A DNA stretch of 64,000 nucleotides from assembly GCA_976226885.1 (NCBI GenBank), contig OZ320320.1:74028001-74092000 (forward strand), read 5' to 3'. The notes under the pieces were generated by a model. That model did not search any database and had not been told where the DNA came from. It was given only the letters and a program-made list of their open reading frames with translations. This DNA is from Iphione sp. A-MEVVRFRX5 (taxonomy: Eukaryota). Both the position numbers and the translations under genes were made by a program. Positions 22,222 to 58,671 of this stretch are shown one piece after another (positions within the stretch are counted from its first letter, which is position 1; each line of letters opens with the position of its first letter).

Positions 22222-22478
22222 TCATACGATGGACACCTTCTCTGTCCGCTCCTTCAGCAGGAGCTGGTCAGTCCGGGGTCCCCCGTCCAGGGGCTCCCTG
22301 TCCCTGGCGATGGCCGCCCCTCGCGTGACGTAGCGCACCTCGATCTCCTGCTTGTATTTCTTCTTGCGTACTTTCCTCCGCCGATGCAGCACGCAGACGA
22401 GGATGAAGACGAGCAGGACGAGCGTGATCACCACCCCGAGGCTGATGTGCAGAACGCCGTGGTCCGAGTAGCTGGGAT
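22222..22478 (-). CDS. CUB-LDLa membrane protein (Neto/SOL-1-like), terminal coding exon: TM helix and cytoplasmic tail
   Basis: Pyrimidine tract plus TAG acceptor at 22480-22479. Reads PSYSDHGVLHISLGVVITLVLLVFILVCVL-HRRRKVRKKKYKQ...EKVSIV*: hydrophobic helix, basic stop-transfer segment, TGA at 22224-22222. Confidence 0.9.
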
Positions 22479-22549
22479 CTACTTAGAAGGGGAGGAGAAG
22501 CGGGGAAGAGCAGCTCGTTACACAGTATAGCGACGGAGAGAAGATTAAA

Positions 22550-22743
22550 CAGTGAAAACCCCTCATTACGGACACCCCCCCCCTCCCGCTCTATTCAGGA
22601 CACCCTCTCCTCGTTATTAACAGGCAGAGAAACAGAACCAAATCGATATATCCAGGTTAAAATACTCCTGCTATTAAAGATATCACATACTAGGGACAGT
22701 TTCAACCAGTCTCTTTACTGACCGTTGTAGAGAGGTTCCACTG
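22550..22743. mobile_element. MITE with CAGTG termini
   Basis: Left CAGTGAAAACCCCTC versus right reverse complement CAGTGGAACCTCTC; TA on the right flank. Confidence 0.6.
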
Positions 22744-23819
22744 TATTTATAAATGCACATGTGGCTGAGTCATTAATCTAATATATAACAGACTCATCAA
22801 AAGGGAAAACACCCTTGGTTATTACACTACCTCATTTAATACGGCTCCTTATACTAGTTGGGAGCTGGCTGTAAACAAGTCCTTCGGAATCTAGTTTTTG
22901 TCGCTGTAATTCCCCCTCTCTCCGGCATCTTTTTGCGCCCTGGAAAACTACTGGGCCAATATCCGCTGCCAACGCCATCTGGTAATACATTAACCACTAC
23001 CCCGTTGTCTTTATTTATAAGAAAATACGTCTTTTTATTAAAATAATTTTTAAAAATCAAACTCTTTTACATACAAGTACATGTATCATGATTTCAGCCT
23101 GCCATTAGTCTAGCTTTGGCACACTGATTATCAGCAGCAGTTTGGGTCTGATCATCGTCAGCAGCGGATGGTACACCGAAGTCTAACGGGATTTCTTACA
23201 CTAATGTGATTCAAGATAGGTCAGTGATTGATTATATCTAGTCATATAATAGACAGCAATATCTAGTTAAAAAGAAAGCTCTATTCTTTGTATTAACACT
23301 GATCTAAATAGAGGAAAGCATTGCGCTGCTTGTCTACTTTGCATAATGATATAGAAACTAACGACATTCCTCGTTAATGACAGCATTGGAAGTTTGCCTT
23401 CTCCGTCAAAATTAGACTGTCCAAGCTCCAGTGGTGCTTGGTCTGATAAAACTTTGCTAAATAAAAATACCATCTTTCCTATTATTTTTTACTTGTATCA
23501 TCGGAACTTTGCTATCATCATCAAGGTCTGTGCGTTAATTATCACTAGGACCTCAGAACGCTCTACAATGGCGGGGCAATGTTTGCCCGATCCGTGAAAA
23601 GACTTTTGTTCTCTTGAGATTCTGTTTCTATGAACTACATGTTTGTCCCTCTCTTTCGTAAACTACGATTTCTCGAGTAGTATATAAAGTGATGCATTTA
23701 GGATGCATCTGTAAAGATATAAACTGTGACCAAACAATAAGGTGATGGTGGGCTGTGAGACTCAGGTTCGCTTCGCGACGAAGCAGGAGAAAAAGGCACG
23801 AAGACCCGTTTCAACATAC

Positions 23820-23822
23820 CGC
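23820..23822 (-). CDS. Candidate 3-nt microexon (GCG) of the CUB-LDLa gene
   Basis: Minus strand reads TGCTGTTTCCTGTTTCTCTTGCAG|GCG|GTATGT. Inclusion changes the junction codon T|AT (Tyr) to TGC GAT (Cys-Asp) and restores LDLa Cys6. Confidence 0.55.
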
Positions 23823-24038
23823 CTGCAAGAGAAACAGGAAACAGCATATTATATTACTGTACGTGAAAGGCTAATGGTAATATTCAATTTACTTATTAGT
23901 GTTACTTTGTGTGAATGTAGAACATTTGGATTTCTGTGGAAGGCCGTGTGAGTAATAACATGGAATTCTTTTGATTACCGAGCAAACGTCGGTGAAAGGA
24001 AGTAGGTTGACCGAAGGCACTATTAAGGTGGAACTCAC

Positions 24039-24155
24039 ATTTCATGTTCTCATCTGAAGTGTCATCTCTACCACAATTTGGATTATTGTTACATTTGAGT
24101 GAGCTGGATATACAGTAGCCCGACTTCTTACAGACGAAACCAGGACACGCTTCAC
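24039..24155 (-). CDS. CUB-LDLa gene exon: LDL-receptor class A module
   Basis: TTTTTTGCAG acceptor and GTGAGT donor; EACPGFVCKKSGYCISSSLKCNNNPNCGRDDTSDENMK has LDLa cysteine spacing and the acidic D-x-S-D-E motif; 117 bp, phase 1/1. Confidence 0.92.
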
Positions 24156-24635
24156 CTGCAAAAAATATAAAAAAAACAGTCAAGTACACTTTTGTCAAAC
24201 AAAAAACCTGGTTGACCGCCCATGTGTGTCAAAATATAAAACCAGTTGGGCACACTTGTATATCAATACATAAAACCAGTCAGGCACACGTATCTGTCAA
24301 AAATTAAAACCGATTAAGCACACAATCATGTATGTCAAATGATTACACCAGTCCAGCACAAATACACATTTTAATGTAGATAATCTTCAAATTACAATAT
24401 TATGAAATTAATACAAAGGTTGATAGAAATGAGTCCAAATTGCTACATGCGGTTGAATAAGCTGGATTTATTGCTGATATTCACCTGATTAAAATTAATG
24501 TTCCTCCTTCTTTGGCAGGATCTATGAGACCAGCAAAGAAACGAAACGCATGGCAAGGTAGAACCTTTGCGTATAAATTTATTCTACCTTATTTGCAGAA
24601 TCTAGTTCACACGTTTTTTTATGTGTGAGACTTAC

Positions 24636-24709
24636 CTGACATTGGCAGGATTTCTGTCCAAGCTATTTCGAATCCCTTGGCTCCAACGCTACGGGCGGAC
24701 GTAATGAAT
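24636..24709 (-). CDS. CUB-LDLa gene exon: end of last CUB domain
   Basis: TTTTCTGGTAG acceptor and GTAAGT donor; FITSARSVGAKGFEIAWTEILPMS (CUB-terminal GF motif); 74 bp, phase 2/1, fits both neighbours. Confidence 0.9.
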
Positions 24710-25008
24710 CTACCAGAAAATAAGAGTCGTGTAGTCAATACAAAATCTTATCCTGAGGGAGATCATGATATTTACTTTCAGAGAAGGAAATCGTATCTTG
24801 TACCGGTTTAATCAAAGAACCCCTTCAGGTATAAGGTGTTCATTGAAAGAATCGCGGCAAATGGATTTTCTTATGATAGAGGTGAAGGTATAATTACCTA
24901 AAAGTGGAGCAAAACGGCAAGGCGAGGAGAAACAGGGACAGAAACACATGTAGAACACAGGGAGAGACAGAGGCAGGAAAATTGATACTAATGAAGAGGC
25001 ACACTAAG

Positions 25009-58480: not shown

Positions 58481-58671
58481 CTGTGACAAATTTGTAGTGC
58501 GCCCTGAAGCCCTTGCCTGTACAGGTGCCGGTGGCGTTGAAGACGAGGAAGAGGCGGGGATCGGTTGTCACCAGCATGTCTGGTGTCTGATTGCCACAGA
58601 AGACCTTATCCGGCCTCTCGGACGTAACATCCTGACCGTCAAGGTAAGCTTTCATATAGCCGCTAATACAC
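58481..58671 (-). CDS. CUB-LDLa gene exon: second half of a CUB domain (most 5' exon found)
   Basis: Long pyrimidine tract plus CACAG acceptor and GTAGGT donor; CISGYMKAYLDGQ..KVFCGNQTPDMLVTTDPRLFLVFNATGTCTGKGFRAHYKFVT; 191 bp, phase 2/1. It joins the 40238 exon as FVT-D-YAIPG. Confidence 0.92.

What the first reader, a model, noticed from the sequence alone, without database searches (positions are those of the whole stretch)
23814..23850. Candidate 3-nt microexon that supplies the sixth cysteine of the LDLa module
Seen: the LDLa exon (24039-24155) encodes only 5 cysteines and ends on a split codon T|. Direct splicing to the TM exon (|AT) gives Tyr where Cys6 belongs, and no acceptor near the TM exon gives Cys. 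In the intervening intron the minus strand has a strong acceptor (TGCTGTTTCCTGTTTCTCTTGCAG), three bases (GCG), then a strong donor (GTATGT). Inclusion yields ...DENMK-C-D-PSYS..., in frame. Established: LDLa modules need three disulfides (C1-C3, C2-C5, C4-C6). Bilaterian neural microexons of 3-27 nt are promoted by the Srrm2/3/4 eMIC domain through UGC motifs near the 3' splice site; a TGC sits about 24 nt upstream here. Inference: a minimal splicing switch could toggle folding of the juxtamembrane LDLa domain of a Neto/SOL-1-like protein. Automated annotation would very likely miss it.
Basis: partly seen in the sequence, partly recalled or inferred. Interest (0 to 1): 0.8.

Follow-up and report, generated by a model that had tools for sequence, protein, structure and literature searches.

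The report
Conserved 3-base exon completing LDLa cysteine
A three-base exon hidden in an intron of an annelid multi-CUB/LDLa synaptic-type receptor gene very probably exists, because related worms keep the same three bases either as a free mini-exon or fused to a neighbouring exon; no RNA data could be obtained to show it in a transcript.

Summary
The LDLa exon (24155-24039, minus strand) ends AAAT|GTGAGT. The TM/tail exon starts ctaagtag|ATCCCAGC at 22478. Direct splicing therefore gives TAT (Tyr) where Cys6 belongs. GCG at 23822-23820 has a strong acceptor (UCUCU-UGC-AG) and a strong donor (GTATGT).

No RNA run was listed for this genome, so I tested the idea by comparison with relatives.
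- Five other annelid-type loci carry YAG|GTG|GTAyGT in the same intron. One of them (L027) has a TM exon starting AC, so it also needs the three bases to make Cys.
- In other relatives the same three bases are fused to the TM exon (cag|GTGGTCC, cag|GCGGTCC) or to the LDLa exon (TGTA|GTATGT).
- Inclusion restores the spacing Cys-x-x-x-Tyr seen where no splice choice is open.
- The annotated Paralvinella palmiformis protein reads ...KC-D-PSYT..., as predicted here.

The microexon is therefore very probably real. The proposed on/off "folding switch" is untested. Because the first two bases of the TM exon have drifted away from GY in several lineages, constitutive inclusion is more likely.

The gene has at least three CUB domains in the window. 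Full-length relatives are about 840 aa, LEV-10-like rather than Neto.

The scan's earlier notes held only this same record, and no copy on other DNA.

The parts
24039..24155 (-). LDLa exon, phase 1-1, five complete Cys codons; its last base T is the first base of the Cys6 codon
   Evidence: (PF00057, E 7.7e-5; the profile end aligns to the read-through Cys)
24033..24038 (-). 5' splice site GTGAGT of intron 1, at the same position (inside the Cys6 codon) as in relatives L002, L010, L012, L013, L027, L028 and L033
23823..24038 (-). intron 1 (216 nt), between the LDLa exon and the microexon
   Evidence: inferred from splice sites
23823..23847 (-). 3' splice region of the microexon: UGC, pyrimidine tract UUUCCUGUUUCUCU, UGC, AG
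   Evidence: motif architecture as described
23820..23822 (-). 3-nt microexon GCG: GC completes the Cys6 codon (T|GC); G starts the next codon (G|AT = Asp)
23814..23819 (-). 5' splice site GTATGT of intron 2 (G at -1 is the last microexon base)
22479..23819 (-). intron 2 (1341 nt), between the microexon and the TM exon; no other in-frame GY-starting exon candidate with usable sites
22222..22478 (-). last coding exon: AT + PSYSDHG, TM helix, HRRRK, EIEVRYVTR, ...KERTEKVSIV, stop (22224-22222)
24649..24711 (-). end of the last CUB domain (FITSARSVGAKGFEIAWTEI); a separate exon here, fused with the LDLa exon in L002
25386..25508 (-). middle exon of the last CUB domain
30664..30831 (-). first exon of the last CUB domain
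32158..32367 (-). C-terminal half of the preceding CUB domain
40039..40242 (-). N-terminal half of the preceding CUB domain
58488..58604 (-). C-terminal part of a further upstream CUB domain (weak match); the gene probably continues beyond the window

Best explanation
GCG at 23822-23820 (minus strand) is a real 3-nt exon of a multi-CUB/LDLa/single-pass membrane protein gene. The mRNA is spliced ...AAAT | GCG | ATCCCAGC..., giving ...DENMK-C-D-PSYSDHG.... The two bases GC complete the codon of the sixth LDLa cysteine (partner of Cys4). The third base G opens the next codon and also serves as the -1 G of the next 5' splice site. The exon is old within annelids. Both introns that flank it exist separately in relatives, and precise loss of one or the other has fused the three bases to the LDLa exon or to the TM exon in different lineages. 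In this genome, inclusion is most likely constitutive for the membrane-anchored isoform. The first two bases of the TM exon have drifted from GY to AT, so skipping would replace Cys6 by Tyr. Shown here: the sequence anatomy, conservation in other loci, fused forms, conserved peptide spacing. Inferred: actual inclusion in mRNA, constitutive rather than regulated use.
For: (1) Anatomy and rarity of the site in the window.
(2) The TM-exon start differs among relatives. It is GT or GC in many. It is AT in the window and in L011/L015, AC in L008 and in L009/L025/L027, CT in L004, CC in L005/6, and GG in L007. With a preceding T these would give Tyr, Ser or Trp instead of Cys6.
(3) L027 spans the whole region: the LDLa exon ends GGCT|GTAAGT, the TM exon starts cag|ACGCT, and the intron holds cgtgcag|GTG|gtacgt. 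That gives T|GTG|AC = Cys-Asp, the same design as here.
(4) The same element, TG-Y-AG|G-Y-G|GTA-N-GT, lies in the corresponding intron of L023, L024, L032 and L033. The intron sequence around it is barely or not alignable.
(5) Enrichment: 5 strict-pattern hits in 20.4 kb of target introns against 9 in 343 kb of other sequence on both strands. One of those 9 is L024's own site. Expected 0.54, Poisson P about 2e-4. All six intron sites are GYG.
(6) Fused forms. The TM exon starts cag|GTGGTCC in L002, L010 and L012, and cag|GCGGTCC in L013. The LDLa exon ends AAATGTA|GTATGT in L034, whose TM exon starts AT. It ends TGTG|GTAATA in L016. L003, P0013, P0028 and P0031 have no intron here.
(7) Spacing. 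All forms with no open splice choice read Cys6-x-x-x-Tyr. Inclusion gives that spacing in the window, L027, L033, L032, L023 and L024; skipping gives one residue fewer.
(8) Paralvinella palmiformis KAK2162714.1 (P0056) has a tail identical to that of locus L011, whose TM exon starts AT. It is annotated ...DTSDEPPKC-D-PSYTNHG. That annotation used MAKER2 with transcriptomes.
(9) Cys6 is present in every full-length relative found, across annelids, molluscs and insects.
Against: There is no RNA evidence. A junction pattern allowing 0-3 inserted bases found nothing in the metagenome contigs. L028/L030/L031 have no candidate in a complete 1.8-kb intron and would splice T|GT directly. The transcript-derived Dimorphilus-like protein P0040 has the short spacing C-P-E-Y. 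The family therefore tolerates the form without the three bases where the TM exon starts GY. L011 shows no candidate in the 1.69 kb upstream of its AT-starting TM exon; its LDLa exon is off the contig, so it may be a fused type like L034. Recognition of a 3-nt exon by the spliceosome is demanding.
Confidence: 0.85

Rival explanations
1. There is no microexon. The LDLa exon splices directly to the TM exon and this species has Tyr in place of Cys6, giving a degenerate LDLa module with an unpaired Cys4.
For: It is the simplest splice between two strong sites. LEV-10's LDLa domain is reported dispensable for AChR clustering in C. elegans (review PMC9083331).
Against: Cys6 is kept in all relatives where it can be read. 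The rest of the module, including the D-x-S-D-E acidic cluster, is intact. A conserved AG|GYG|GT element sits in this very intron in six loci. Several lineages would have to have lost Cys6 independently to Tyr, Ser or Trp.
Confidence: 0.07
2. Cys6 comes from reading through the GTGAGT donor. The LDLa exon extends to a downstream donor CTCG|GTAATC (exon end 23979), giving ...KCEFHLNSAFGQPTSFHRRLL-D-PSYS..., also in frame.
For: The frame stays open for 45 codons past the donor (ORF 23902-24198). G|AT keeps the frame.
Against: It needs a consensus GTGAGT to be ignored, and that donor's position inside the Cys6 codon is shared with L002, L010, L012, L013, L027, L028 and L033. The 22 added residues have no counterpart in any relative and would break the conserved Cys-x-x-x-Tyr spacing. 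An open frame of about 23 codons is expected by chance about one time in three.
Confidence: 0.04
3. The acceptor at 23823 opens a longer alternative terminal exon (C-G-MLKRVFVPFSPASSRSEPESHSPPSPYCLVTVYIFTDAS-stop) instead of a 3-nt exon. This would resemble the alternative last exons that start C-G... in mollusc and beetle isoforms.
For: The frame is open for 41 codons from 23822. NCBI isoforms of Gigantopelta, Patella, Cylas and Atheta have alternative C-terminal exons that begin right after Cys6, often C-G-, with Ser/Pro-rich then hydrophobic ends.
Against: The tail here is only weakly hydrophobic (0.35). The equivalent read-through in L027 and L033 stops after about 12-15 codons (read from the sequences shown). 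It would leave the TM isoform without Cys6. It could coexist with the microexon as a minor isoform.
Confidence: 0.04

Closest known systems
3-nt microexon of cytohesin-1 (diglycine/triglycine variants; PMC6314551, listed)
   Same: A three-base cassette exon that changes the protein by a single residue in a functional domain.
   Different: The cytohesin exon adds one whole Gly codon and is alternatively spliced with a known lipid-binding consequence. Here the exon is phase 1-1, completes a split Cys codon and opens the next codon. In this genome skipping would remove a disulfide cysteine, and regulation is unknown.
Conserved 3-bp micro-exon of Drosophila homothorax (PMC7392893, listed)
   Same: An evolutionarily conserved 3-bp exon.
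   Different: A different gene family and an alternative exon with isoform-specific functions. No split structural codon is involved.
SRRM3/4 (eMIC)-dependent neural microexons (bioRxiv 10.1101/2024.09.17.613571)
   Same: UCUC-type pyrimidine element followed by UGC just before the AG, a strong 5' splice site, and a synaptic-type membrane protein gene.
   Different: Dependence on Srrm and neural restriction were not tested. Two of the six conserved copies (L023, L024) have UGU instead of UGC before the AG, and all five relatives' copies have UG-rich tracts. Comparative data suggest constitutive use.
Misannotated very small microexons in plants (PMC8831610, listed)
   Same: Tiny constitutive coding exons that annotation pipelines miss, recognisable because skipping damages a conserved domain.
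   Different: This is an animal gene. The present case has natural left-fused, right-fused and free variants among relatives.
LEV-10 / Neto / SOL-2 CUB-LDLa auxiliary proteins of neurotransmitter receptors (PMC9083331)
   Same: Type I membrane protein with CUB domains, a juxtamembrane LDLa, a short tail ending in a PDZ-ligand-like S-I-V. The last CUB-CUB-LDLa-TM part is collinear with Neto2 (7f56_E).
   Different: About five CUBs, as in LEV-10, versus two in Neto/SOL-2. Orthology to LEV-10 was not established, and I found no microexon described for these genes.

Membership tests
Microexon (cassette exon of 3-27/30 nt) | Very short sequence inside an intron of a coding gene, bounded by a 3' splice site (Py tract, YAG) and a 5' splice site (GTRNGT) on the coding strand | tested here: met
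   82% pyrimidine at -20..-4, CAG, GCG, GTATGT
Microexon (cassette exon of 3-27/30 nt) | Keeps the reading frame between the neighbouring exons | tested here: met
   T|GCG|AT = TGC GAT
Microexon (cassette exon of 3-27/30 nt) | Conserved, with its splice sites, in orthologous introns | tested here: met
   L023, L024, L025/L027, L032, L033; fused equivalents in L002, L010, L012, L013, L016, L034
Microexon (cassette exon of 3-27/30 nt) | Present in mature mRNA | not testable with these tools
   No RNA run listed, so read laying was unusable. Junction pattern absent from metagenome contigs. No transcript-derived protein of a free-microexon species found.
SRRM3/4 (eMIC)-dependent neural microexon | UGC motif between the pyrimidine tract / branch point and the AG | tested here: inconclusive
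   UGC at -5..-3 in the window, L027 and L033; at -11..-9 in L032; absent near the AG in L023 and L024. Criterion.
SRRM3/4 (eMIC)-dependent neural microexon | Inclusion restricted to neurons and dependent on Srrm234 eMIC | not testable with these tools
   No expression data.
LDL-receptor class A module (PF00057) | Six cysteines forming three disulfides, and an acidic D-x-S-D-E calcium cluster | tested here: met
   Five Cys plus the split sixth. DTSDE present. Pfam E 7.7e-5, 23.3 bits against a cut-off of 24.1, on the read-through ORF. Disulfide pairing is established knowledge and was not tested.
Neto / SOL-2 | Exactly two CUB domains, one LDLa, one TM | tested here: not met
   At least three CUBs in the window. 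Relatives are about 840 aa, with four CUB matches in a 599-aa partial protein.
LEV-10 | Five CUB domains, one LDLa, type I TM (PMC9083331) | tested here: inconclusive
   The architecture is compatible. The family search hit an 859-aa Caenorhabditis bovis protein (E 1.7e-73), but its identity as LEV-10 was not checked.
SOL-1 | Four CUB domains and TM, no LDLa (PMC9083331) | tested here: not met
   LDLa present.

The most novel reading that the evidence does not exclude
An ancient 3-nt exon, shared by distant annelid lineages and possibly related to the 21-nt insertion at the same junction in a gastropod, has become irreversibly obligatory in some lineages. Once it was always included, the GY that begins the TM exon was freed to drift (to AT, AC and others), so that skipping now destroys a disulfide cysteine. 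This would be a natural ratchet of constructive neutral evolution. Free, left-fused, right-fused and intron-less states are all preserved among living relatives.
Probability: 0.45. Interest if true: 0.7.

Novelty: new member of a known kind. Interest (0 to 1): 0.6.

Why it matters
Three-base exons are the lower limit of what the spliceosome handles, and few are documented. This one carries two bases of a structurally essential cysteine codon, so its omission from gene models yields a wrong protein (Tyr for Cys6). Related species offer a ready-made series: free, fused to the upstream exon, fused to the downstream exon, lost, or no introns. That series is useful for studying how microexons arise, persist and disappear, and how neighbouring exon ends co-evolve with them. 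It also marks the Cys6 codon of this protostome CUB/LDLa receptor family as a conserved phase-1 splice junction. In mollusc and insect annotations, alternative C-terminal exons are attached at this point.

Tried and rejected
RNA evidence:
A single-exon query might have done better. Read laying was therefore impossible.
- An exact search for the skipping or inclusion junction in the metagenome contigs found nothing.

Annotation of the window:
- Rfam scan of the window: nothing.
- The intron is not a repeat within the window.

Looking for transcripts or more complete loci:
- Word search with a 172-aa profile found only genomic ORF fragments, no transcripts.
- The library-wide HMM search (search of protein representatives) with the tail exon gave few, mostly fragmentary representatives.
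- Short contigs upstream of class-II TM exons (L004, L005/6, L007, L008, L011) hold no candidate. They do not reach the LDLa exon, so they are uninformative.
- Aligning the L028 intron to the L032 intron failed apart from the acceptor region. L028 truly lacks an AG|GYN|GT or AG|GYN|GC site.

Other readings and analyses:
- Search for a GPI-like alternative last exon in the intron: nothing convincing.
- The tree of the tail peptides is mostly unresolved. It shows only that the window lies outside the well-supported clade that holds L023, L027, L032 and L033, and that L028 (no microexon) pairs with L032.
- Rejected readings: an alternative acceptor at the TM exon (gives Leu); an alternative donor one codon later at the LDLa exon (the intron would begin AG).

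Full report
OBSERVATION

On the minus strand the LDLa exon runs 24155..24039. It encodes five cysteines and ends on a T followed by the consensus donor GTGAGT. Pfam's LDLa profile aligns through to a read-through TGT, which shows that this T is the first base of the Cys6 codon. The last coding exon starts at 22478 after ...ccccttctaagtAG with ATCCCAGC. Direct splicing therefore gives TAT, Tyr. The only other AG nearby would give Leu.

In the 1560-nt intron the sequence reads tgctgtttcctgtttctcttgcAG | GCG | GTATGT, with the three bases at 23822-23820. Inclusion gives TGC GAT, Cys-Asp, in frame.

Of 475 AG-NNN-GT sites on both strands of the window, only two combine a pyrimidine tract of at least 80%, Y at -3 and a near-consensus donor. 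One is this site, and it is the only one beginning GY. The thresholds were set after the fact, so this is indicative only.

RNA EVIDENCE

None could be had. A pattern search for either junction form in the metagenome contigs was blank. Everything below is therefore comparative.

RELATIVES

The tail exon (PSYSDHG, TM helix, HRRRK, EIEVRYVTR, KERTEKVSIV) found ORF fragments of relatives. A profile of them (A1) fetched 22 further loci from metagenome contigs. Other loci were fetched by exact protein look-up.

I call a locus class I if its TM exon starts with GY, and class II if it does not. The first two bases of the TM exon are:
- GT or GC in many loci: L001, L002, L010, L012-L014, L016-L023, L026, L028-L033.
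- AT in the window and in L011/L015.
- AC in L008 and in L009/L025/L027.
- CT in L004, CC in L005/L006, GG in L007.

If a T preceded them, the second group would encode Tyr, Ser or Trp where every readable relative has Cys6. Something must therefore supply G-Y-N in these species.

THE SAME ELEMENT ELSEWHERE

L027 contains the whole region. Its LDLa exon ends GGCT|GTAAGT and its TM exon starts cccgcag|ACGCT. About 1 kb into the intron lies cgtgcag|GTG|gtacgt, giving T|GTG|AC = Cys-Asp. This is the window's design in a distant lineage.

The same element occurs in the corresponding intron of L033, L032, L023 and L024. It sits 0.57-1.5 kb upstream of TM exons that start GT. There, inclusion gives Cys-Gly and skipping gives Cys.

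Aligned, the six copies share an invariant TG-Y-AG | G-Y-G | GTA-N-GT core. The surrounding intron is at most weakly alignable: L033 matches L025 and L032 only around the element, and L032 against L028 aligns only at the acceptor.

A strict pattern, YAG|GYN|GTRNG, hits 5 times in 20.4 kb of target introns. It hits 9 times in 343 kb of all other fetched sequence on both strands, and one of those 9 is L024's own site. The expectation is 0.54, with Poisson P about 2e-4. All six intron copies are GYG, unlike the background hits.

FUSED FORMS

In L002, L010 and L012 the LDLa exon ends ...T|GTRAGT and the TM exon starts cag|GTGGTCC. In L013 the TM exon starts cag|GCGGTCC. That is GYG followed by the usual GT-CCx start, as expected from precise loss of intron 2.

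In L034 the LDLa exon ends AAATGTA|GTATGT and the TM exon starts cag|ATCCCTCG, giving Cys-Asn-Pro-Ser-Tyr. L016 ends TGTG|GTAATA. These are as expected from loss of intron 1.

L003, P0013, P0028 and P0031 have LDLa and TM in one exon. Both intron positions, three bases apart, are thus independently attested. A gene holding both has a 3-nt exon.

SPACING

Every form in which no splice choice is open reads Cys6-x-x-x-Tyr:
- C-G-P-A-Y in L002, L010, L012 and L013.
- C-N-P-S-Y in L034.
- C-A-H-D-Y, C-K-N-D-Y and C-T-S-E-Y in the intron-less forms.

Inclusion gives the same spacing in the window (C-D-P-S-Y), in L027 (C-D-A-S-Y) and in L033, L032 and L023 (C-G-A-S-Y). Skipping gives one residue fewer.

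The third word search found named proteins. Paralvinella palmiformis KAK2162714.1 has a tail identical to that of L011, whose TM exon starts AT. It is annotated ...DTSDEPPKC-D-PSYTNHG. This is exactly the junction predicted for the window. That annotation used MAKER2 with Augustus and Trinity transcriptomes (PMC10414810). I could not fetch its genomic locus, because the look-ups were exhausted. It may therefore be of the fused type.

EXCEPTIONS

L028/L030/L031 have a complete 1.8-kb intron with no candidate and a GT-starting TM exon. Their nearest relative in the tail tree, L032, has the element, which suggests secondary loss.

The Dimorphilus-type protein P0040 is encoded without interruption on Logan contigs, which are presumably transcripts, and it reads C-P-E-Y.

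The form without the three bases is therefore tolerated where the TM exon supplies GY. This fits the idea that the constraint lies on Cys6 and not on the extra residue.

HOW IT MOST LIKELY WORKS

The exon's bases are all over-determined. G and Y are codon positions 2-3 of Cys. The first G is also the preferred first exon base after a 3' splice site. The last G is the -1 base of the next donor and the first base of the following codon, which is Gly, Asp or Ala in different species.

The window's upstream flank, UUUCCUGUUUCUCU-UGC-AG, together with a strong donor, matches the bipartite UCUC...UGC enhancer architecture described for SRRM3/4-dependent microexons. However, two of the six copies have UGU instead, and the relatives' copies have UG-rich tracts. 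Srrm dependence therefore remains open.

The TM-exon start has drifted off GY in several lineages. I therefore judge inclusion to be constitutive in those lineages (about two chances in three), not a regulated folding switch. In GT-starting species it could be alternative without harm.

THE GENE

Guided by P0040, the window holds, on the minus strand:
- CUB exons at about 58.6 kb, 40.2 kb, 32.3 kb, 30.8 kb, 25.5 kb and 24.7 kb.
- The LDLa exon, the microexon and the TM/tail exon.

Full-length relatives are about 830-870 aa in annelids, molluscs, insects and nematodes, with four CUB matches in a 599-aa partial protein. That is the LEV-10 architecture, five CUBs plus LDLa (PMC9083331). It is not Neto's two CUBs, although the C-terminal CUB-CUB-LDLa-TM part aligns collinearly with Neto2 (7f56_E). 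Orthology to LEV-10 was not tested.

WIDER CONTEXT

In NCBI isoform sets the proteins diverge exactly after Cys6. Gigantopelta aegis X1 and X2 differ only by seven residues, SSDHHNG, inserted after Cys6. Gigantopelta, Patella, Cylas and Atheta have alternative C-terminal exons that start there. The phase-1 intron inside the Cys6 codon is therefore probably old in protostomes and a preferred point of alternative splicing.

Three-base microexons as such are known, for example in cytohesin-1 and Drosophila homothorax. I found none described for Neto/LEV-10-type genes.

VERDICT

The microexon is very probably real (0.85) and is a new, well-supported member of a known kind. The switch hypothesis is unproven and less likely than constitutive use.

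Noticed in passing
window 22222-22400 (-) and all related loci: The cytoplasmic tail has invariant motifs across relatives (H-RRK after the TM helix, VRYVTR, E-TEKVS-V) and ends in S-I-V, which looks like a class I PDZ ligand. Molluscs end QKVSMV and insects ASVDSV.
   Followed up: partly
proteins P0055/P0075/P0076, P0057/P0080, P0066/P0092/P0093, P0067/P0096-P0100: NCBI isoforms of the mollusc and beetle orthologues branch exactly after Cys6 into a TM form, short secreted-like forms (C-E-stop, C-V-R-stop), and forms with Ser/Pro-rich then hydrophobic ends (GPI-signal-like). Two Atheta isoforms (P0096, P0097) replace Cys6 by Leu (DD-LPMC).
   Followed up: partly
window 23698-23822 (-): If the GTATGT donor is not used, the frame stays open from the microexon acceptor for 41 codons (CGMLKRVFVPFSPASS...). 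This could be an alternative terminal exon, but its end is only weakly hydrophobic.
   Followed up: partly
window 24156-24648 (-) versus L002:782-986: This genome has an extra intron between the end of the last CUB domain and the LDLa module. In L002 the two are one exon.
   Followed up: no
L011 / L015 (ENA ERZ27262661 and a JGI metagenome): These 'metagenome' contigs encode a tail identical to the Paralvinella palmiformis protein KAK2162714.1, so they are animal host DNA. Likewise, the clade L017-L033 from JGI metagenomes appears to be worm host DNA.
   Followed up: partly
L023:1405-1452, L032:1123-1170, L033:1228-1275, L027:2604-2651: The microexon copies of the L017-L033 clade are preceded by UG/GU-rich tracts (for example gtgtgtgtgtatgtgtgtgtag) rather than a classical pyrimidine tract.
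   Followed up: no
window 31258-32162: Another first-stage note (s1-325208) flags a minisatellite at an exon/intron junction next to the CUB exon at about 32.2 kb of this same gene. I did not examine it.
   Followed up: no
window about 35.3-35.5 kb, 34.3-34.9 kb, 3.0-3.8 kb, 45.5-46.7 kb: There is an N run at about 35.3-35.5 kb, and long CT/GA-rich low-complexity tracts that give spurious Ser/Leu/Pro-rich ORFs on both strands.
   Followed up: no
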